DNA of 64,000 bases, from the NCBI RefSeq assembly GCF_001194135.2, contig NC_068992.1:48846568-48910567 (forward strand), written 5' to 3'. Positions within the stretch are counted from its first letter, which is position 1. Each line of letters starts with the position of its first letter. This stretch comes from Octopus bimaculoides (lineage: Eukaryota). Shown here in pieces: positions 560-58,182 of the stretch. The translations under genes and the position numbers were made by a program. Under the pieces are notes generated by a model. That model ran no database searches. It had not been told where the DNA came from and was given only the letters and a program-made list of their open reading frames with translations.

Positions 560-1598
560 TAGGGCAGAGAAGCTCATTGTATGCATTCCCAGTTTACACA
601 CGCAAATTCACAGGTAAAATATGTATTTAAAAAAATAAATAAATAAATAAATTCAAGAATGGATGTTGTTTTCACAGCTATAATTTTCTTCTCATCACAT
701 GAGTCATTCCAGTTAACACGATTCTTTTTGCACTTCCTGTAGGGATGGTAATGCTGGTATCATTTTCAAATAGGTTTCAGTACCTTTTTTTTTTATCATT
801 CCTAGAGATCCTACAATCACTGGTACGGTAGTCGCCTTGAGGTGCCACATTTTTTCAATTTCTATTAGCAATCTTTATATTTACTGGTCTTGTCAAATTC
901 TTTCGCCGCTATATTATGATCGCAAGGAATATTCATGTCAATTAATAAACACATCTTTGTATGATCTTTTATAATAATATCCGGCTTATTAGCTTTTATA
1001 GTTTTGTCGGTATGTACGGGGAAGTCCCAGAGAATCGACACATTTTCTCCCTCACTCACACCTTCAGGATGGTATTTATACCATTTGTCAGCGGTTTTGA
1101 TTTTATAATGCCGACATATTGTCCAGTGTAAATACTTGGCGACTCTGTCATGTCTTGCTTTATATTCTACAGGTGCTATGACTCTACACCCTGAGATAAG
1201 GTGGTCTATAGTTTCAATCGCATCGTTACAAAATCGGCATTTTGTGTCAGCTCCATTTTTTATCACATTGGTTTGATAGTTCCGGGTTAATAAGCTTTGG
1301 TCTTGAGCAGCCAATATGAAACCTTCACTCTCTGCTTTTAGCCCTGAACTTCGTAACCACTGATGCGTGTGTTTCTGGTCGACATCAGCTTGTTTGCTAC
1401 GAGCCACATACTTGCCATGCAGAGGTTTCTGTTCCCATCTGATAGCTAATTGTTCATGTGTTTTGTCTTTGCAATTAGTTTTATTTTCTTTGCAGCAGCA
1501 GTTGGCGAATTTCCTTCAACCTGATCAATCTGGTAGGTATCTAAGAGATCAGTAGCGAATGTTTTGCTCTCTTTCAGAATAGAGTGAAGTTCTTTCGG
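560..1598 (-). mobile_element. 5'-truncated R4/Dong-like non-LTR retrotransposon (CCHC knuckle + restriction-like endonuclease), frameshifted
   Basis: ORF 865-1407 has GLKAESEGFILAAQDQ, CRFCNDAIETIDHLISGC, RHDRVAKYLHW, ILWDFP and KPDIII..LIDMNIP. A shifted frame continues LIEIEKMWHLKATTVPVIVGSLGMIKK. The 5' break abuts the (ATT)n run at 1599-1658. Confidence 0.9.
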
Positions 1599-5381: not shown

Positions 5382-5521
5382 AGGTGGCGAACTGTCAGGA
5401 TCGTTATCACGCCGGGTGAAATGTTTAGCAGTATTTCGTCCGCCTTTACTATTCTGAGTTCAAATTCCACTAAGGCTGACTTTACCTTTCATGCTTTTGG
5501 GGTCGATAAGATAGGCATCAG
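5381..5521 (+). mobile_element. SINE family B, 5' part
   Basis: GGTGGCGAACTGTCAGGATCGTTA..GTTCAAATTCC..TTTCATGCTTTTGGGGTCGATAA, directly after (ATT)n. Confidence 0.8.
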
Positions 5522-5723
5522 TAAAACATTGCAATATCTATAATCTTGGTTTTCCTTTCTCTCTCTATCTGCCACAACAATATCTGGTCTCCGAGCCTTG
5601 ATTAGAGAGCCACATTGGATTGTAAAATCCCACAGTATTTTATATTCCTTATTCTCGGTGACTCCACGTTCACGTTCGTACCATTTCCGTGCTCCGTTCA
5701 GACCGTACTTTTCACATAGCCTC

Positions 5724-5832
5724 CAGTGCTGGCAGAATCGTTAGCACACCGGGCGAAATGTTTAGCTGCATTTCGTCCGTCTGTACGTTCTGAGTTCAAA
5801 TTCCGCCGAGGTCGATTTTGCCTTTCATCCTG
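5724..5832 (+). mobile_element. SINE family B, 5' part
   Basis: CTGGCAGAATCGTTAGCAC..GTTCAAATTCCGCCGAGGTCGA..CCTTTCATCC, followed by (ATT)n. Confidence 0.85.
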
Positions 5833-11821: not shown

Positions 11822-12187
11822 GTATATGCATGTATGTATGTTTGTATATATAAATATATACACACACACAGGCATGTGTGTGTGTACTTACGCGATTAGT
11901 ATTTTTTTTATATATTGACTAGTTTCAGTCTTTGGACTACTGCCATACCAGGGGCACAATCGTAAAAGGTTTTGCCGACCATGTCGATCTCAGTACATAT
12001 TTCAATCTGTTATTTAATTTCTCATTATCTATTTGTCGAACCGTTATTTAACGAGTCACAAAGCGAAACTAACGTAAATAAAACTTTCTCAACGTGCCAT
12101 GCACTACGGCCGAACACGAAACCAGGGGAGGCTCTTAACAACGTCATGCCACTGACTCGAATAATAATATATAATTTATAAATATGT

Positions 12188-12288
12188 GCCACTGCGCGGC
12201 ACCTTGAGCAAGTGTTTTCTACAATAGCCTCGCTCTGACCAAAGCCTACTGGGAGGATTTGGTTGACAGAAACTGAAGGAAGCTCACT
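12188..12288 (+). mobile_element. CORE-like SINE (family A) fragment
   Basis: GCCACTGCGCGGCACCTTGAGCAAGTGTTTTCTACAATAGCC..ACCAAAGCC..GAAACTGAAGGAAGC, homologous to 54000-54095. Confidence 0.75.
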
Positions 12289-12291
12289 TTC

Positions 12292-12692
12292 GTGACCTCT
12301 ATTAATGTTGCCTCTGGGTTCTAATCGCTAATGAGTCAGCCTTTTAATTAGTTATTTACACTTACACCGATTAGAAAATCAGCATATGATTTAAACGGTT
12401 TTTTTAATACTATTGACAGAGGAAGGTGAGTTTAACCCTAGGCACTAAAAGCCGCTGATGAGAATTAAGGTGTCCAACACCAAGATTCGAAGTCGCGATA
12501 CGGCTTCGTACGCTAGGGATTTACCTCCCTTTGTCAGTCATTAAATTAGTGCTCTGTGGCTTTAGAGTTAATTTAACTCTCATCTTAGCGTAATCGGTGC
12601 TGACCAAACACCCTCTGTCACTTATGTGACCTCTATTATTTTAGCCTTTAGGTTCTAACTGCTAATAAGCCAACTTTTTAATTAGTCGTTTA
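12292..12692 (+). mobile_element. Candidate non-LTR retrozyme / Penelope-type repeat unit (~334-bp monomer bounded by 67-bp direct repeats)
   Basis: 12292-12358 and 12626-12692 align without gaps (about 54/67 identical) and enclose a hammerhead fold and several inverted repeats. Confidence 0.6.
12414..12536 (+). ncRNA. Type I hammerhead ribozyme fold (A15.1->G variant)
   Basis: Stem I AAGCCG 12449-54 / CGGCTT 12501-06; core CTGATGA 12455-61. Stem II GAATT/GATTC plus GGTGT-CCA-ACACC 12462-88; GAA 12489-91. Short stem III around palindromic CGCG; ATA triplet 12498-12500. Stem I extends via CCCTAG/CTAGGG and an 18-nt helix with 17 pairs. Confidence 0.8.
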
Positions 12693-13408: not shown

Positions 13409-14564
13409 GTGCGTTTGTATGTGTATGTATGTACATATATACATCNNNNNNNNNNNNNNNNNNNNNNNNNNNNNNNNNNNNNNNNNNNNNNNNNNNNNNN
13501 NNNNNNNNNNNNNNNNNNNNNNNNNNNNNNNNNNNNNNNNNNNNNNNNNNNNNNNNNNNNNNNNNNNNNNNNNNNNNNNNNNNNNNNNNNNNNNNNNNNN
13601 NNNNNNNNNNNNNNNNNNNNNNNNNNNNNNNNNNNNNNNNNNNNNNNNNNNNNNNNNNNNNNNNNNNNNNNNNNNNNNNNNNNNNNNNNNNNNNNNNNNN
13701 NNNNNNNNNNNNNNNNNNNNNNNNNNNNNNNNNNNNNNNNNNNNNNNNNNNNNNNNNNNNNNNNNNNNNNNNNNNNNNNNNNNNNNNNNNNNNNNNNNNN
13801 NNNNNNNNNNNNNNNNNNNNNNNNNNNNNNNNNNNNNNNNNNNNNNNNNNNNNNNNNNNNNNNNNNNNNNNNNNNNNNNNNNNNNNNNNNNNNNNNNNNN
13901 NNNNNNNNNNNNNNNNNNNNNNNNNNNNNNNNNNNNNNNNNNNNNNNNNNNNNNNNNNNNNNNNNNNNNNNNNNNNNNNNNNNNNNNNNNNNNNNNNNNN
14001 NNNNNNNNNNNNNNNNNNNNNNNAGTGCATATCTACATTTTGTATATGTGTGTATACATATATATATATATATATATATATATGCACGTACGTATGTATA
14101 TATATATATTATCGAGTATAAATTATGAAATTGTGTTGTTGTGATGCCGGTTTTTGCTTTTGTTTTTGTATATATACTTAAAAGTACTCGATGCATACTT
14201 ATACCGGAAGTGTGTAGAGTTTAATACGTATGTTTTAAAATATGCGTGTATATATGTACGCGCGCGCACGTGTGTGTGTTTTAGTATGCATGCATACATA
14301 CATACATACATACATACGTACGTACATACATAGACCTATATGTATACATATATATAAATATGTAGAAGTATACATAAATGGGCGCAGTCTAATAACTAAA
14401 ACAAACAAAAAATAGAAAAGATAAAAAACTATAGTCTACACATATATAAGTACATATATATGAATATATATATACATATGCATATATTTATGTATATGTA
14501 TGTATACGTATACATATATGTACTTATATGACTACTTATATATATGTATATATATGTGTGTATG

Positions 14565-22989: not shown

Positions 22990-23292
22990 TTAATCACAGT
23001 ATTCATTTTTGTTAAGCCTGGTACTTATTCTATCGGTTTCTTTAGCTGGACCGCCAATTAACGGTGACGTAAACACACCAGCACCGGTTGTCAAGCGGTA
23101 ATGGGGGACAGACACAGACACAAACCTACACACAGTTCTTTGTGTTTCCGTCTACGAAATCCCCTCACAAGGTTTGGGTCGGCCCAAGGCTATACTAAAA
23201 GGCACTTGACCCAGTTGCCACGCAATGGGACTGAACCCGGAACCATGTGGTTGAGAAACAAGCTCCTTACCACACGACTACGCCTGCGCCTA
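22990..23292 (-). mobile_element. SINE family A (CORE-like), internally shortened
   Basis: Reverse complement of the family A head (GGCGCAGGCGTAGTCGTGTGGTAAG..GGTTCCGGGTTCAGTCCC) and body. Confidence 0.85.
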
Positions 23293-23995
23293 TATACACA
23301 TATATATATATATATATATATANNNNNNNNNNNNNNNNNNNNNNNNNNNNNNNNNNNNNNNNNNNNNNNNNNNNNNNNNNNNNNNNNNNNNNNNNNNNNN
23401 NNNNNNNNNNNNNNNNNNNNNNNNNNNNNNNNNNNNNNNNNNNNNNNNNNNNNNNNNNNNNNNNNNNNNNNNNNNNNNNNNNNNNNNNNNNNNNNNNNNN
23501 NNNNTATATATACATACATATTCATATGCATATATATATATATATAGACACGTACATTATATGTGTGTTTATGTATAACTGTGTGTGTGTGAATGTATGT
23601 GAAAGTGTGCGTGTGTGTGTGTATTTTCAGCTCATTAGAATGGGCTACCTTGTCCATTATTCCAACTTATGCCCTCCTAAGGTTCGTTACATGGTGTAAG
23701 CGCCAATATTCCTCACTGTTTTCTTTTTGTAAAAGTTAGGCATTATTCGTTCGTTTCGTTCTCACGTGGTGATAGAGTTTTCTCCTACAAATGATTTTAT
23801 GCTTTCACTTTCAAACACTTTCAGGAATATCTTCCCTTCTCTTTCTCTCCCTCCCCCTCACTCTCTCTCTCTCTCTCTCTCTCACTTTACCTATCTATCT
23901 CTTTATATATATGTATCTCTCTCTCTCTCGCTCTCTCTCTCTCTCGCTCTCTCTCTCTCTCGCTCTCTCTCTCTCTCGCTCTCTCTCTCTCTCGC

Positions 23996-45599: not shown

Positions 45600-46236
45600 A
45601 CTCTACTCTTTACTCTTTTACTTGTTTCAGTCATTTGACTGCGGCCATGCTGGAGCACCGCCTTTAGTCGAGCAAATGGACCCCGGGACTTATTCTTTGT
45701 AAGCCTAGTACTTATTCTATCGGTCTCTTTTGCCGAACCGCTAAGTGACGGGGACATAAACACACCAGCATCGGNNNNNNNNNNNNNNNNNNNNNNNNNN
45801 NNNNNNNNNNNNNNNNNNNNNNNNNNNNNNNNNNNNNNNNNNNNNNNNNNNNNNNNNNNNNNNNNNNNNNNNNNNNNNNNNNNNNNNNNNNNNNNNNNNN
45901 NNNNNNNNNNNNNNNNNNNNNNNNNNNNNNNNNNNNNNNNNNNNNNNNNNNNNNNNNNNNNNNNNNNNNNNNNNNNNNNNNNNNNNNNNNNNNNNNNNNN
46001 NNNNNNNNNNNNNNTATACATATATATATATAGATATATAGATAGATATATATATATATACATATATATATACGACGGGCTTCTTTCAGTTTCCGTCTAC
46101 CAAATCCACTCACAAGGCTTTGGTCGGCTCGAGGCTATAGTAGAAGACACTTGCCCAAGGTGCCATTCAGTGGGACTGAACCCGGAATCATGTGGTTCGT
46201 AAGCAAGCTACTTACCACACAGCCACTCCTGTGCCT
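45600..46236 (-). mobile_element. SINE family A, full length, gap at internal microsatellite
   Basis: Nearly identical to the reverse complement of 53935-54360 on both sides of the gap. Confidence 0.9.
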
Positions 46237-47469
46237 ATGTTCTCTTTTATTTTTTTTTGTTTCAATTAGCTTTTCCCTCTCCACTTTTCCTTCTCCTCCA
46301 CCTTTTCCTCTTCTTTCTCCTCCCATATCTTAACTCTAGTTGTTAATTGTGGGACCGAAGGTATAATTTTAGGGTTGTGTATTTGGTTCCATAAGGACAT
46401 CGATGGTTTTCTTAATCAATTTGGATTTTAGATCTTTTTACAATGTCGATAATTTTTTCTTTTTTTCTTTTGGCAACGTTTTGTTTGTTTGTTTTTTGCA
46501 TGGTTGGTTCTTTAATATTTTCACTGCATTTAAAGGATTTATTCATTAGATGTGTAGTTGTCTCTACTGCAATGCTTCCTTTCTTATACAGAGTTCTTGT
46601 GTTCTGTAACTGAAGGTTTCTGTAGAAATGCTTCCATTCATTGTGGAAGGTAATCTTTAAGATTAAGTTGGTTGTGTTGTTTTACTTTCACTATGTATCC
46701 TTTCTATGAGTCGTCTTATTTCAATTTCGGGTATCTTTTATTGCTTATTATTAATCTCCCTAACTTGCAAATGTATCCGTCTTTATATTTTCCTCGCTTC
46801 TTCGTTGTTTTTTCCCTCCATCATTCATACGTCACTTACTGTTCTTGTGTGTTGGATACGTGTTAATGTTTAATAGAAATGTAAGGCTTCAATGCTATGT
46901 TCATTGGTCCAAAAGAGCATTTTTATTTTGTTTTATTTTGTTTTATTTTGTTTTATCTTTGTTTAGATCCAATCTTTGCAGAGGATGCTGCTTCTAAAAC
47001 ATTGTTTCATTACTTTCGTATCGTGGTCGCAATAAACTTGCGATGCGAATTTCTTTGACCATTCTGATACAGTTGCTCGTATTTTGCAGATATTGAAGTT
47101 ATTAATGGACATTAGTAATTTGATTACTTTTTAATTAGGTTTATTTAAACTCATTCCACTTTAGTTTATTTATATTGAAAAGTTTGTTTCGTTTCGTTTG
47201 GTCTATGTTAAAAGTTCATTTTGTGTTGCTATTGTTGTTGCTTTTGTCTATTGTTTATCTTTATTTTCGTATACTTAATCGTTCTTTAAATAACAAATTT
47301 GTATGTAATAAACATATGTATTACGTATGAAATAATATCAGTCGTACACATTAGAGTCATTTAGTATTGTCTTGTTCATCTTCAAAATGTCGGTTTCCAT
47401 TCGCTTGAAGTTCTTCATCCATCTGTGAATATTGTTGTTGTCAGTCGCGTCGTCTGCGTAAACTATTTG

Positions 47470-49061: not shown

Positions 49062-49442
49062 TTTATTCTTTTACTTGCTTCAGTCATTTGACTGCGGCCA
49101 TGTTGAGGAACCAGCTTTTAGTCGAACAAGTCCACCAAACGACTTTTCTTTTAAGCCTGGTACTTATTCTATCGGTGTCTTTTGCCAAACTGCTAAGTTA
49201 TGGGGATGTTAACAAACCAACACCGGTTGTCAAGTGGTGCTGGGGAGACAAGCACAAACACAAATACATACACACTTTGATATATATGCGACGGGATTCT
49301 TTTAGTTTCTGCCTACCAAATCCACTCACAAGGCTTTGGTCGGTTTCGGGACGACCATCGTACACACTTGCCCAAGGTGCCACGCAATGGAATTGAACCC
49401 GGAACCATGCGTTTGGGAAGGAAGCTTCTTACCACACAGCTA
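49062..49442 (-). mobile_element. SINE family A, near full length
   Basis: Reverse complement contains the head, CORE-like block and GTAAAAGAATAAAAG tail. Confidence 0.88.
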
Positions 49443-49635
49443 AGCCTAGGTCTATGTATATATGTTTCTATACAAATTTGTGTGTATGTGTGTGTGGGGG
49501 TGTTTGTGTGAGTGTATATATGCATGTGTTCGTGCGTGTGTGTGTGTGTGTGTGTGTGCATGTGTATGTGTGTGTGTGCATGTGTATGTGTGTGTGCGCG
49601 TGTGTGTGTGTATGTGTGTGTGTGTGCGTGCGTGC

Positions 49636-49698
<63 letters not shown>

Positions 49699-50924
49699 CG
49701 TGTGTGCATTATTGTTCGGAAAGTGTACAGATAATGAAAGCAAGGAGCTTTCAAACAAAGGAGATAACTTCAGACGTGTTTCGGTCTACGTGGCAGCTCT
49801 ACCAGCTAGAAATAGCAGCCAAATCTGCTTCAAATCACAATCTGCTATATTAAACAAAAACAATGACGAATCGAGAAAAAGAGATGGAATAGTCATGACT
49901 GAATTGCCTTTGATTATAGGTCTACATGCTCAAGGCCGATCTGTGGCTAAATAAAAACAACAACGACTCTATCAACACTAATTGAATATTTAGTTCATGT
50001 CTTGAAGCAACGTCTGTATATACATATACATATATATATATATACAACTAATGTTTATCTAATCAACATCCGCAGTTTTTGATGCTTCAATCAACATCGA
50101 CGATATACAGCTACGTAATAATCAATATTTGATACAATCTGTATCAATACTGTCAACATAAAACCACTGTGACAAATCAATATCTAAAGACTATACCTCT
50201 CTAGTCAAACTTCGCAGTTGGTATTTATCGACTTCAAATGGATACATAGGCAACATCCATACACTGCATCCCGCAGCGCTATATATATATGTGTGTGTAT
50301 ATATATATGTATGTATATATATATATANNNNNNNNNNNNNNNNNNNNNNNNNNNNNNNNNNNNNNNNNNNNNNNNNNNNNNNNNNNNNNNNNNNNNNNNN
50401 NNNNNNNNNNNNNNNNNNNNNNNNNNNNNNNNNNNNNNNNNNNNNNNNNNNNNNNNNNNNNNNNNNNNNNNNNNNNNNNNNNNNNNNNNNNNNNNNNNNN
50501 NNNNNNNNNNNNNNNNNNNNNNNNNNNNNNNNNNNNNNNNNNNNNNNNNNNNNNNNNNNNNNNNNNNNNNNNNNNNNNNNNNNNNNNNNNNNNNNNNNNN
50601 NNNNNNNNNNNNNNNNNNNNNNNNNNNNNNNNNNNNNNNNNNNNNNNNNNNNNNNNNNNNNNNNNNNNNNNNNNNNNNNNNNNNNNNNNNNNNNNNNNNN
50701 NNNNNNNNNNNNNNNNNNNNNNNNNNNNNNNNNNNNNNNNNNNNNNNNNNNNNNNNNNNNNNNNNNNNNNNNNNNNNNNNNNNNNNNNNNNNNNNNNNNN
50801 NNNNNNNNNNNNNNNNNNNNNNNNNNNNNNNNNNNNNNNNNNNNNNNNNNNNNNNNNNNNNNNNNNNNNNNNNNNNNNNNNNNNNNNNNNNNNNNNNNNN
50901 TATATATATATACATACATATATA

Positions 50925-51080
50925 TGACGGGCTTCTTTTCAGTTTCCGTCTACCAAATCCACTCACAAGGCTTTGGTAGGCCCGAGGCTATAGTAGAAGA
51001 CACACGCCCAAGGTGCCACGCAGTGGGACTGAACCCGGAATCATGTGGTTGGTAAGCAAGCTACTTACCACACAGCCACT
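50925..51080 (-). mobile_element. SINE family A, 5' half
   Basis: GACGGGCTTCTTTTCAGTTTCCGTCTACC..CTTACCACACAGCCACT. Confidence 0.88.
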
Positions 51081-51289
51081 CATACAGATATACTGCTTGC
51101 CTATCCAAACAAGATCTATACTAACCACCCAGGAAGCTTCTTCCATAGAGCCATTTGACATGCTAATGGTAGCACCAAAATCTCCTTCACCCTTTCTAGT
51201 GAATATCTACATACTATATCAATCCAATCACAGACGACTCTAATAACAATCCGGTCGACTTAATTCGCTATACCTATCCATAAACAATC

Positions 51290-53680: not shown

Positions 53681-54629
53681 TACGAGGTTGAGCTGAAAAG
53701 CTCATAGGCTGACAATGAAGGAGTGATACTAAAGCTGTGAAATCTTGCATGCCTTCATTTCAACTCTGTATTAATAACTGCATCGCTTCTTTCCAAGTAA
53801 ACTGACATCTTACTATTCAAAGAACACTTCAGAAGTAACAAGTAGCGACTTCTCTTGAAAATGGACAAAATTTGCCATCGTGTTGGTATCAAGTTCCTGA
53901 AGAAAAAGGATTTATTCCCGAAGGACATATATACATAGGCGCAGGAGTGGCTGTGTGGTAAGTAGCTTGCTTACCAACCACATGGTTCCGGGTTCAGTCC
54001 CACTGTGAGGCATCTTGGGCAAGTGTCTTCTACTATAGCCTCGGGCCGACCAAAGCCTTGTGAGTGGATTTGGTAGACGGAAACTGAAAGAAGCCCGTCG
54101 TATATATGTATATATACATATATATATGTGTGTGTGTGTGTTTGTGTGTGTCTGTGTTTGTCCCCCTAGCATTGCTTGACAACCGACGCTGGTGTGTTTT
54201 CGTTCCCGTCACTTAGCGGTTCGGCAAAAAAGACCGACAGAATAGGTACTAGGCTTACAAAGAATAAGTCCCGGGGTCCATTTGCTCGACTAAAGGCGGT
54301 GCTCTAGCATGGCCGCAGTCAAATGACTGAAACAAATAAAAGAGTAAAAGAGTAAAAGAGTATACTGACATCATTGCTACATTAGAGGATGACTCACAAG
54401 GCTTTGGTCGGCCCGAGGCTATAGCAGAAGACACTTGCCCAAGGTGCCATGGAGGACTTTTTTGACCAACAGGATAGAATCTTGTACACTAATGGGGTCC
54501 AAGCACTGCAACACCAATGGAAGAAGTGTGTGGACAACAAAGGAGACTATGTTGAAAAATAAACCTCGTTTAGTCACATTCCATGAGAGTATCTTGGTCA
54601 ACCTATTAACTTTTCCGCCGACCGGCGTA
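53681..54629 (+). mobile_element. Internally deleted mariner element with both TIRs and TA target duplication
   Basis: 5' TIR TACGAGGTTGAGCTGAAAAGCTCATAGGCTGACAA and 3' TIR TTGGTCAACCTATTAACTTTTCCGCCGACCGGCGTA. N-terminus MDKICHRVGIKFLKKKDLFPKDI..TDIIATLEDD; C-terminus EDFFDQQDRILYTNGVQALQHQWKKCVDNKGDYVEK*. Confidence 0.88.
53935..54360 (+). mobile_element. SINE family A (tRNA-derived, CORE-like), full length, inserted in the mariner ORF
   Basis: Head GGCGCAGGAGTGGCTGTGTGGTAAG..GGTTCCGGGTTCAGTCCC and CORE-like CTTGGGCAAGTGTCTTCT. Internal (TA)(TG) run, tail (GAGTAAAA)n and TATAC on both sides. Confidence 0.92.
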
Positions 54630-56804: not shown

Positions 56805-58182
56805 TAGTTTTATTTTTATAACGTGCTTTCACTTCACTACCGAGCGCAGCTCTGTGCGCCTTGGGTATGTGCTGTGGTTTGCTGTGGTGCTCTTATGTTT
56901 ACTGTATTGAAAGTGTTTTGCGTAGAATGTGTGCAGTACCCAGTAGTGCAATTTTCTGTATGTTATATATATTTGTAAGTCCTGGTGTTTTTGTTATGTA
57001 TTTGTCTGAATATTTTTTTATTATACCTAAGGCACCTACTATGATAGGAATTGTTTCTGTTTTTAGATTCCACANNNNNNNNNNNNNNNNNNNNNNNNNN
57101 NNNNNNNNNNNNNNNNNNNNNNNNNNNNNNNNNNNNNNNNNNNNNNNNNNNNNNNNNNNNNNNNNNNNNNNNNNNNNNNNNNNNNNNNNNNNNNNNNNNN
57201 NNNNNNNNNNNNNNNNNNNNNNNNNNNNNNNNNNNNNNNNNNNNNNNNNNNNNNNNNNNNNNNNNNNNNNNNNNNNNNNNNNNNNNNNNNNNNNNNNNNN
57301 NNNNNNNNNNNNNNNNNNNNNNNNNNNNNNNNNNNNNNNNNNNNNNNNNNNNNNNNNNNNNNNNNNNNNNNNNNNNNNNNNNNNNNNNNNNNNNNNNNNN
57401 NNNNNNNNNNNNNNNNNNNNNNNNNNNNNNNNNNNNNNNNNNNNNNNNNNNNNNNNNNNNNNNNNNNNNNNNNNNNNNNNNNNNNNNNNNNNNNNNNNNN
57501 NNNNNNNNNNNNNNNNNNNNNNNNNNNNNNNNNNNNNNNNNNNNNNNNNNNNNNNNNNNNNNNNNNNNNNNNNNNNNNNNNNNNNNNNNNNNNNNNNNNN
57601 NNNNNNNNNNNNNNNNNNNNNNNNNNNNNNNNNNNNNNNNNNNNNNNNNNNNNNNNNNNNNNNNNNNNNNNNNNNNNNNNNNNNNNNNNNNNNNNNNNNN
57701 NNNNNNNNNNNNNNNNNNNNNNNNNNNNNNNNNNNNNNNNNNNNNNNNNNNNNNNNNNNNNNNNNNNNNNNNNNNNNNNNNNNNNNNNNNNNNNNNNNNN
57801 NNNNNNNNNNNNNNNNNNNNNNNNNNNNNNNNNNNNNNNNNNNNNNNNNNNNNNNNNNNNNNNNNNNNNNNNNNNNNNNNNNNNNNNNNNNNNNNNNNNN
57901 NNNNNNNNNNNNNNNNNNNNNNNNNNNNNNNNNNNNNNNNNNNNNNNNNNNNNNNNNNNNNNNNNNNNNNNGTGTTTTGTGGCTATTTGTATTAGTTTCC
58001 CTTGCTTCTGGAGTAGGTATTTTTGCAGTCCTATGGTGGTTATTTTATAATAGTTTTCTAGCTGTATAAGACCCCTGCCACCTTCTGTGCGTTGTATATA
58101 TAGCCTTTCTATGTCAGATTTTGGGTGGTGCATCCTATATCCTGTCATTATTTTTCTTGTTTTTCTGTCTATTTTACATAGT

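What the first reader, a model, noticed from the sequence alone, without database searches (positions are those of the whole stretch)
12414..12536. Type I hammerhead ribozyme at the tip of a long hairpin
Seen: stem I AAGCCG/CGGCTT, then core CTGATGA, then a 10-bp stem II with a symmetric AA/AA loop and CCA cap. These are followed by GAA and a 2-bp stem III closed by palindromic CGCG, then the AUA triplet, with predicted cleavage between 12500 and 12501. Stem I continues through an internal loop, CCCTAG/CTAGGG and an 18-nt helix with 17 pairs including three G-U. Known: short stem III with a palindromic loop is typical of metazoan type I hammerheads that cleave as dimers. Caveat: position 15.1 (12492) is G instead of the conserved A, so this copy may be slow or dead.
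Basis: partly seen in the sequence, partly recalled or inferred. Interest (0 to 1): 0.9.

Follow-up and report, generated by a model that had tools for sequence, protein, structure and literature searches.

The report
Decayed hammerhead ribozyme retroelement relic
This is a genuine but mutated copy of the hammerhead self-cleaving RNA motif, left in an octopus-type genome by a small ribozyme-carrying retroelement; such motifs are common in animal genomes, so the find is real but ordinary.

Summary
The motif has type I connectivity. It has a 6-bp helix I, CUGAUGA, a G10.1-C11.1-closed helix II and GAA. Helix III is 2 bp with a palindromic CGCG loop, followed by A17. It sits at the tip of a 123-nt hairpin (z = -6.8). 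The only core defect is G instead of A at 15.1. A descriptor search expects 0.0005 such motifs per window by chance and found two. The second, at 38340-38387 on the minus strand, has an intact core and is unrelated in sequence. The window comes from an octopod cephalopod. An Argonauta Penelope-like element fetched here carries similar hammerheads in both flanking repeats. The finding lies in a 409-bp insertion made of 1.22 copies of a 334-bp unit. That insertion sits between a SINE body and its TA-rich tail, as expected for a retrozyme or Penelope-type more-than-unit insertion. The two repeat ends are 80% identical, so one core mutation fits neutral decay. Folding favours a double-hammerhead dimer. 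Rfam gives no hit, but it also misses the controls. No sister copies could be sought, because the host genome was not searchable. Verdict: a fossil copy, probably inactive, and a new member of a known kind.

The parts
12187..12283 (+). 5'-truncated copy of a tRNA-derived octopod SINE. It ends at ...GAAGGAAGC and lacks the usual CCGTCG(TA/TG)n tail. This is the target context, not part of the element.
   Evidence: Aligned with five other copies in the window (alignment A1). A SINE-derived peptide matches only an Argonauta hians protein.
12284..12358 (+). R1, the left 75-nt terminal direct repeat and the start of the 334-bp unit.
   Evidence: 80% identical to 12618-12692 with sharp ends and no gaps (family D10). 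The 15 mismatches are 11 transitions and 4 transversions.
12359..12413 (+). Spacer between R1 and the hairpin.
   Evidence: No repeat and no significant fold. The unit without the hairpin has z = -0.8.
12414..12536 (+). 123-nt hairpin. It consists of the closing stem of helix I (an 18-nt helix plus CCCTAG/CTAGGG), an internal loop (loop 1) and the hammerhead at the tip.
   Evidence: MFE -51.1 kcal/mol, z = -6.8. The reverse strand gives -47.7, z = -5.1.
12449..12506 (+). Type I hammerhead motif HH1. Helix I is 12449-54 with 12501-06. C3-A9 is 12455-61, helix II 12462-88 and G12-A14 12489-91. Helix III is 12492-99 (G-U, U-A, loop CGCG) and A17 is 12500. The predicted scissile bond is 12500/12501. 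G at 12492 replaces the conserved A15.1.
   Evidence: Sequence read. Descriptor hit. Chance expectation. Dimer fold.
12537..12617 (+). Spacer between the hairpin and R2, the end of the first 334-bp unit.
12618..12692 (+). R2, the right 75-nt terminal direct repeat and the start of a second, incomplete unit. It is followed directly by TATATATATG, like the SINE's TA-rich tail.
38340..38387 (-). HH2, a second and unrelated type I hammerhead with a fully canonical core. The sequence is CUGUGA CUGAAGA GGAA-AUAACCA-UUCC GAA A-UG-CUAG-CA-U C UCACAG. This is context evidence that the genome carries such motifs.
   Evidence: Descriptor hit, sequence, fold at the tip of a longer hairpin, dimer fold.

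Best explanation
The hairpin is the ribozyme module of an old insertion of a small, non-autonomous, hammerhead-carrying retroelement. This is the animal non-LTR retrozyme kind, which depends on Penelope-like elements. The inferred life cycle, taken from the literature on the family, is as follows. Tandem copies are transcribed. Two hammerheads pair through their palindromic helix III (GUCGCGAU with itself, 8 bp) to form a double hammerhead. Each cuts after position 17 and releases a unit of about 334 nt with 5'-OH and 2',3'-cyclic phosphate ends. A tRNA ligase circularises the unit. A Penelope-type reverse transcriptase then copies the circle for more than one turn and inserts it, preferentially into TA microsatellites. 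What the locus shows directly is one insertion of 1.22 units (12284-12692). It begins and ends with the same 75-nt segment. It lies exactly between a SINE body and that SINE's TA-rich tail. The two 75-nt ends have since diverged by 20%. At that rate about 1.5 substitutions are expected in the 13 constrained core positions, and one is seen (A15.1 to G). The three G-U pairs and one A-C mismatch in the 18-nt helix are also single transitions away from Watson-Crick pairs. This copy has one ribozyme, no partner nearby and a damaged core. It is therefore most likely a non-cleaving fossil.
For: The motif is complete except at 15.1 and lies far beyond chance. G10.1-C11.1 and the palindromic 15.2-loop 3-16.2 are features that Cervera and de la Pena list as marks of genuine animal hammerheads (PMC4209133), and both are present. 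The monomer's minimum-energy fold (-18.8) pairs the core with helix III, and the single hammerhead fold is 6.8 kcal/mol worse. The dimer's minimum-energy fold (-43.7, against 2 x -18.8) is the double hammerhead with free cores. A second, intact type I hammerhead lies in the same window. The host is an octopod. An Argonauta Penelope-like element has a GIY-YIG domain (Pfam) and RT-like frames. It carries CUGAAGA...GAAA-CGCG-U hammerheads in both 270-nt flanking repeats and sits in (TA)n. The unit is 334 bp with 40% GC. This falls within the published 150-450 bp and under-45-50% GC for animal retrozymes (PMC7229834), and solitary monomers are common (bioRxiv 10.64898/2026.07.22.740005). More-than-unit reverse transcription of circles was proposed for these elements (PMC4209133), and TA-repeat targets are documented for Penelope-like elements (PMC8557442). 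The transition excess between R1 and R2 (11:4) fits neutral decay.
Against: No sister copy was found, so there is no family consensus and no covariation. The window has none. Metagenome, GTDB and viral scans gave only chance matches without stems. About 61 kb of other octopod-type DNA showed no similarity. No Rfam hammerhead model reaches even about 13 bits. Only one ribozyme is present per 1.22 units, whereas retrozymes are defined by tandem units that each carry one. Outside the hairpin the unit has no significant structure (z = -0.8), unlike the compact folds drawn for retrozyme circles. A 75-nt local duplication unrelated to retrotransposition would give the same repeat pattern. Helix II (10 bp with an internal loop) is longer than in canonical animal hammerheads.
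Confidence: 0.62

Rival explanations
1. It is a fragment of an autonomous Penelope-like element, such as a solo or truncated flanking repeat (pLTR) with its hammerhead, and not a short non-autonomous retrozyme unit.
For: Most animal Penelope-type hammerheads occur as single motifs from truncated elements (PMC4209133). Helix II is long, as in Penelope-type hammerheads, which have 6-8 bp (PMC4209133). The octopod element in L011 has a CGCG loop 3 like HH1 and also sits in TA repeats.
Against: No RT or GIY-YIG domain was found in any open frame of 70 aa or more within about 4 kb on either side. An assembly gap at 13446-14023 was not covered. There is no sequence similarity to the Argonauta or Octopus vulgaris Penelope-like loci. 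The 6-bp helix I with a closing stem is the canonical type, not the minimal type. The insertion has clean ends only 409 bp apart.
Confidence: 0.2
2. It is still an active or host-used ribozyme. In this reading G15.1-U16.1 is a tolerated natural variant that cleaves in the dimeric form, or the hairpin has been recruited for another RNA function.
For: Some natural core variants, including U15.1-A16.1, keep low activity (PMC3088659). All other core positions and all three helices are intact. The hairpin is unusually well preserved.
Against: Mutants at 15.1 or 16.1 are at least 10-fold less active, and A15.1 contacts G5 (PMC3088659). There is no second copy within reach to form the dimer. The number of defects matches neutral expectation from the R1/R2 divergence, so no selection need be invoked.
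Confidence: 0.08
3. It is a chance hammerhead-like arrangement inside an unrelated inverted repeat or foldback element.
For: Simple motifs that fit the consensus do arise by chance in large genomes (PMC3088659). At 5e-4 per 64 kb, a genome of roughly 2-3 Gb (my estimate of the size) would hold roughly 20. The core is not perfect, and Rfam gives no hit.
Against: The expectation for this one window is 5e-4 before counting three further features: the 6-nt perfect palindrome in helix III, the 10-bp helix II and the long closing stem. The same two sequence boxes occur 6 times in 596 Gb of prokaryotic DNA, and none of those has helices. A second independent hammerhead lies in the same window. No terminal-inverted-repeat element copies and no matching target-site duplication flank the hairpin.
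Confidence: 0.05

Closest known systems
Canonical metazoan type I hammerheads of non-LTR retrozymes and satellite repeats (newt and axolotl satellite repeats, Schistosoma SM-alpha, coral and mussel retrozymes; PMC7229834, PMC4209133)
   Same: Type I connectivity. A 6-bp helix I followed by an internal loop 1 and a closing stem. A G10.1-C11.1 pair. Helix III of 2 bp with a palindromic tetraloop. A predicted need to dimerise. A unit of about 330 bp with 40% GC.
   Different: Helix II is 10 bp with a symmetric AA/AA internal loop, not about 4 bp with a loop. Position 15.1 is G. Only 1.22 units and one ribozyme are present, not an array. Copy number and expression are unknown.
Minimal hammerheads in the flanking repeats of Penelope-like elements (PMC4209133; the Argonauta example in L011 found here)
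   Same: A palindromic helix III with a CGCG centre, a longer helix II, an animal host with Penelope-like elements, and insertion next to TA repeats.
   Different: Minimal hammerheads have a 4-5 bp helix I, often an unpaired base before helix II, and little or no helix III. They also lie in repeats that flank an RT-endonuclease ORF, which is absent here.
Rfam Hammerhead_1 (RF00163)
   Same: The same core boxes in the same order and the same three-helix topology.
   Different: HH1 scores below about 13 bits against a gathering score of 34. The 45-position model favours GUCC/GGAC in helix II, ACG/CGU in helix III and C17. It penalises the 27-nt helix II and the short helix III.
Double hammerheads of avocado sunblotch viroid and newt transcripts (Forster et al. 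1988, as cited in PMC3088659 and PMC4209133)
   Same: The single motif is unstable. An intermolecular, extended helix III built from a palindrome gives the active fold.
   Different: Those are replicating or abundantly transcribed multimeric RNAs. Here there is a single genomic copy.

Membership tests
Hammerhead ribozyme, type I | Conserved core C3 U4 G5 A6 N7 G8 A9 G12 A13 A14 A15.1 U16.1 H17 (consensus as used in PMC3088659) | tested here: not met
   Twelve of 13 positions are present. Position 15.1 (12492) is G, forming G-U instead of A-U. By the strict rule of PMC3088659 this hit would be set aside as a mutant copy in a repeated element.
Hammerhead ribozyme, type I | Three helices around the core with helices II and III closed and helix I open; base pairs adjacent to the core (1.1-2.1, 10.1-11.1) formed | tested here: met
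   Helix I is 6 bp with C1.1-G2.1. Helix II is 5+5 bp with G10.1-C11.1. Helix III is 2 bp.
Hammerhead ribozyme, type I | Match to the curated covariance model (Rfam RF00163 or its clan) at the gathering score | tested here: not met
   No hit at gathering nor at E <= 10 on 351 nt or 68 nt. Controls: the intact HH2 and the Argonauta Penelope-element hammerhead are also missed. A textbook phage hammerhead scores 30.5 bits, under the 34-bit gathering score.
Hammerhead ribozyme, type I | Helices supported by compensatory changes among related copies | tested here: inconclusive
   No related copy could be retrieved. The host genome is not in any searchable collection.
Hammerhead ribozyme, type I | Site-specific self-cleavage after position 17 | not testable with these tools
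   This needs in vitro transcription or RNA end mapping.
Canonical metazoan (dimer-type) type I hammerhead | Helix III of 1-2 bp capped by a 2-4 nt palindromic loop, so that two copies form an extended helix III | tested here: met
   The sequence G-U-CGCG-A-U contains the perfect palindrome UCGCGA. The dimer's minimum-energy structure is the double hammerhead with an 8-bp helix III, at -43.7 against -37.6 kcal/mol for two monomers.
Canonical metazoan (dimer-type) type I hammerhead | Helix I 6 bp and helix II about 4 bp, with conserved loop 1 and loop 2 nucleotides for the tertiary contact | tested here: inconclusive
   Helix I of 6 bp plus an internal loop is present. Helix II is 10 bp with an AA/AA internal loop after 5 bp. 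Whether that loop can replace loop 2 was not tested.
Animal non-LTR retrozyme | Head-to-tail repeats of 150-450 bp, each unit with a type I hammerhead | tested here: inconclusive
   The unit is 334 bp, but only 1.22 units and one hammerhead are present. Solitary monomers are reported for these families (bioRxiv 10.64898/2026.07.22.740005).
Animal non-LTR retrozyme | Low GC (below 45-50%) and no LTR, PBS or PPT | tested here: met
   GC is 40% over the unit. There is no long terminal repeat beyond the 75-nt redundancy. PBS and PPT were not searched for specifically.
Animal non-LTR retrozyme | Multi-copy family in the genome, expressed as linear and circular RNA of unit length | not testable with these tools
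   Neither the host genome nor its transcriptome was available.
Penelope-like element flanking repeat (pLTR) | The repeat flanks an ORF with RT and GIY-YIG endonuclease | tested here: not met
   Pfam found no RT or GIY-YIG in the open frames of 70 aa or more within about 4 kb on either side. The assembly gap at 13446-14023 was not covered.

The most novel reading that the evidence does not exclude
HH1 may be a decayed copy of an octopod-specific retrozyme family with an unusual hammerhead. In that family helix II would be extended to 10 bp, and its symmetric AA/AA internal loop would take over the tertiary contact normally made by loop 2. G15.1-U16.1 might also be a tolerated variant in the dimer. 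The family would still be expressed as circular RNAs of about 334 nt in octopus tissues.
Probability: 0.07. Interest if true: 0.5.

Novelty: new member of a known kind. Interest (0 to 1): 0.2.

Why it matters
It adds octopod cephalopods to the animals in which hammerhead-bearing retroelements can be seen. None of the papers I could search describes them there. An Octopus vulgaris repeat annotation lists Penelope-like elements but mentions no ribozymes (PMC13282606). The find is expected, because canonical Penelope-like elements carry hammerheads generally (PMC8557442). The practical lesson concerns detection. Rfam's hammerhead models miss this class entirely, including the intact copy in the same window, so descriptor searches are needed to annotate them. 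The intact second motif (38340-38387, minus strand) is a better candidate for bench work than the reported one.

Tried and rejected
1. Rfam was run at gathering score on the whole window and at E <= 10 on 351-nt and 68-nt slices. It gave no hammerhead hit. Controls then showed that this negative result means little.
2. Sister copies were sought in several ways:
- blastn within the window found none.
- One metagenome scan gave 10 chance hits, several of them tRNA T-arms.
- One GTDB scan gave 6 hits without helices.
- Two viral scans gave 0 hits.
- blastn against three fetched loci found nothing: Argonauta, Octopus vulgaris and one ENA contig of unknown organism.
3. Four window ORFs were looked up by exact protein match to identify the species, and none was on record. 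A LINE-tail protein search gave only 60-69% matches from assorted marine invertebrates. A SINE-derived peptide finally pointed to octopods.
4. I tested whether the whole 334-nt unit folds as a compact, viroid-like rod. It does not: outside the hairpin z = -0.8.
5. I tested whether the 75-nt repeat extends further, or into the SINE, with gapped local alignment. It does not.
6. I tried to build my own covariance model from phage type I hammerheads. MAFFT misaligned the 3' halves (alignment A2). Such a model would also share Rfam's sequence biases, so I dropped it.
7. A terminal-inverted-repeat (MITE) reading of the hairpin was rejected, because there is no matching target-site duplication and no other copy.
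8. tRNA and other RNA-family readings were rejected. ARAGORN found none, and the only Rfam hits were snoRNA-like noise at E > 5.

Full report
**Observation.**
- Helix I is AAGCCG (12449-12454) paired with CGGCTT (12501-12506).
- The core CTGATGA is at 12455-12461.
- Helix II spans 27 nt (12462-12488): GAATT/GATTC, a symmetric AA/AA loop, GGTGT/ACACC and a CCA cap.
- GAA is at 12489-12491.
- Position 15.1 (12492) is G. It is followed by T, the loop CGCG, A, T16.1 (12499) and A17 (12500).
- Helix I continues through an internal loop into CCCTAG/CTAGGG. Beyond that is an 18-nt helix with 17 pairs, three of them G-U, and one A-C mismatch.
- As RNA the 123 nt fold at -51.1 kcal/mol, against -28.7 +/- 3.3 for shuffles, z = -6.8. 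The complementary strand also folds well, as any hairpin does.

**Is it more than chance?** I wrote a descriptor of the kind used in this field. It requires helix I of at least 5 bp, CUGANGA, and helix II of at least 4 bp closed by G10.1-C11.1. It also requires GAA, A or G at 15.1 paired with U16.1, and H17.
- It gave two hits in the window and none in 400 dinucleotide-preserving shuffles.
- A Markov estimate gives 2e-5 per CUGANGA site. With 27 sites that is 5.3e-4 per window.
- This does not yet count the perfect 6-nt palindrome in helix III, the 10-bp helix II or the long closing stem.
- As a further control, the two HH1 sequence boxes at this spacing occur 6 times in 596 Gb of prokaryotic genomes. 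None of those has helix I or II.

**The second hit.** On the minus strand at 38387-38340 lies CUGUGA CUGAAGA GGAA-AUAACCA-UUCC GAA A-UG-CUAG-CA-U C UCACAG.
- It is a type I hammerhead with every core position canonical.
- It has a 6-bp helix I, a 4-bp helix II and a 10-nt perfectly palindromic helix III.
- It also sits at the tip of a longer imperfect hairpin.
- It shares only the core with the finding, so the two belong to different families.
- Two independent hammerheads in 64 kb show that this genome carries such motifs in numbers.

**Host.** The window is a gapped eukaryotic draft with 18 N runs, many microsatellites and about 33% GC.
- A tRNA-derived SINE recurs in it. A peptide read from that SINE matches a single database protein, from the octopod Argonauta hians.
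- A LINE tail with a zf-RVT domain matches marine invertebrate elements at 60-69% identity.
- The host is therefore an octopod cephalopod. The species was not determined.

**Do octopods have hammerhead-bearing retroelements?** The 20-kb Argonauta locus fetched holds a Penelope-like element.
- Its frames carry an RT-like YLDD motif, and it has a GIY-YIG endonuclease recognised by Pfam.
- It is flanked by 270-nt direct repeats 5,215 bp apart at 94% identity.
- Each repeat holds CUCUAC CUGAAGA UUU-UUAAU-AAA GAA A-CGCG-U U GUAGAG, and the element lies in (TA)n.
- This agrees with the literature. Canonical Penelope-like elements carry hammerheads in their flanking repeats, mostly with a small palindromic helix III (PMC4209133, PMC8557442). 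Animal non-LTR retrozymes are their non-autonomous relatives (PMC7229834; bioRxiv 10.64898/2026.07.22.740005).

**Anatomy of the locus.** A 75-nt segment occurs twice, at 12284-12358 and 12618-12692. The copies are 80% identical, without gaps and with sharp ends. The finding therefore lies in 1.22 copies of a 334-bp unit with 40% GC.
- The left end abuts a 5'-truncated SINE exactly where other copies continue with CCGTCG and a TA/TG microsatellite.
- The right end is followed by TATATATATG.
- A more-than-unit insertion into a TA-rich SINE tail is what is proposed for circle-templated reverse transcription by Penelope-type enzymes (PMC4209133). TA repeats are a preferred target of these elements (PMC8557442).
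- No RT or GIY-YIG domain lies in open frames within about 4 kb on either side. An adjacent autonomous element is therefore not supported, although one assembly gap remains.

**Age and decay (inference).** The 20% difference between the two repeat ends corresponds to a Jukes-Cantor distance of 0.23, or about 0.12 per copy.
- With the calibration used for Octopus vulgaris repeats (0.09 at 25 My and 0.2 at 56 My; PMC13282606), this is about 30 My.
- At that rate the 13 constrained core positions should have taken about 1.5 hits, and one is seen.
- The three G-U pairs and the A-C mismatch of the 18-nt helix are each one transition from a Watson-Crick pair. Transitions also dominate between the repeats, 11 to 4.
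- The state of the hairpin needs no selection to explain it.

**Mechanism.** The 58-nt motif alone prefers a fold at -18.8 kcal/mol in which CUGAU pairs with helix III. The single-hammerhead fold is at -12.0. Two copies together have the double hammerhead as their minimum-energy structure at -43.7, with an 8-bp intermolecular helix III and both cores free. The second motif behaves the same way, at -28.6 against 2 x -6.7. At this locus there is no partner copy. G15.1 also removes the A15.1 contact with G5, and mutants at 15.1 or 16.1 lose at least 10-fold in activity (PMC3088659). I therefore infer that this copy does not cleave.

**Evidence against, and its weight.** Rfam finds no hammerhead at any threshold tried. 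However, it also misses the intact second motif and the Argonauta element's hammerhead. A textbook phage hammerhead between tRNA genes scores 30.5 bits against a gathering score of 34, and was missed at gathering. The 45-position model is tuned to GUCC/GGAC, ACG/CGU and C17. No sister copy was found, but none of the collections holds cephalopod genomes beyond the 61 kb I could fetch. Outside the hairpin the unit is not significantly structured. That fits a retrozyme less well than a compact rod would.

**Comparison and verdict.** The motif works like, and by architecture belongs with, the canonical dimer-type animal hammerheads. It fails strict membership on one defining feature, A15.1, and on the Rfam score. 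It is best described as a mutant copy within a repeated element, the category that Perreault et al. set aside in their screens (PMC3088659). It is a new member of a known kind, in a host group where I found no published description. The interest is low.

Noticed in passing
window 38340-38387 (minus strand); hairpin about 38318-38412: A second type I hammerhead with a fully canonical core: CUGAAGA, GAAA, C17, a 6-bp helix I, a 4-bp helix II and the 10-nt palindromic helix III AUGCUAGCAU. It is unrelated in sequence to the finding and is predicted to act as a dimer. It is a better candidate for an active ribozyme than the reported one.
   Followed up: partly
window 38495-38590 (minus strand): A tRNA-like SINE head lies about 100 nt upstream of the second hammerhead, in the same orientation. 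I recognised its box A and box B-like segments by eye. It may be one composite SINE-plus-hammerhead element of the kind I recall for Schistosoma SM-alpha, or it may be mere adjacency. No other copy is in the window.
   Followed up: no
window 46079-46282, 53891-54145, 50890-51135, 49250-49500, 23090-23330, 12187-12283: A tRNA-derived SINE family of about 200 bp with a CCGTCG(TA/TG)n tail (consensus in alignment A1). Its only protein-database echo is an Argonauta hians protein, which places the window in octopods.
   Followed up: partly
L011 13981-14250 and 19196-19465 (Argonauta hians, GCA_054771915.1): A Penelope-like element with RT-like frames and a GIY-YIG endonuclease. It is flanked by 94%-identical 270-nt repeats, each with a hammerhead whose helix III is A-CGCG-U. 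It is embedded in (TA)n and holds internal 189-nt and 354-357-nt tandem repeats.
   Followed up: partly
L012 11727 (plus strand; Octopus vulgaris OX597819.1): About 1 kb downstream of a Penelope-like ORF lies a relaxed-descriptor hit with UUGAUAA. This is the U3-A8 core covariation described for Schistosoma elements in PMC4209133. It has a 5-bp helix II and the palindromic ACAUGU helix III. Helix I is only 4 A/T pairs, so it may be chance.
   Followed up: no
L098 579-627 and other IMG/VR loci L020-L105: 74 distinct phage hammerheads in type I strand order were picked up by one pattern scan, many next to tRNA arrays. None of the 15 loci tested reached Rfam's gathering score. The Rfam hammerhead thresholds therefore under-call even textbook motifs.
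   Followed up: partly
window 868-1515 (minus strand), 5492-5740 (minus strand), 57063-58148 (minus strand): Fragments of non-LTR (LINE) retrotransposon tails. The first has a zf-RVT match and 60-69% identity to elements of shrimp, cnidarians and a sea cucumber. The other two were recognised by eye only.
   Followed up: partly
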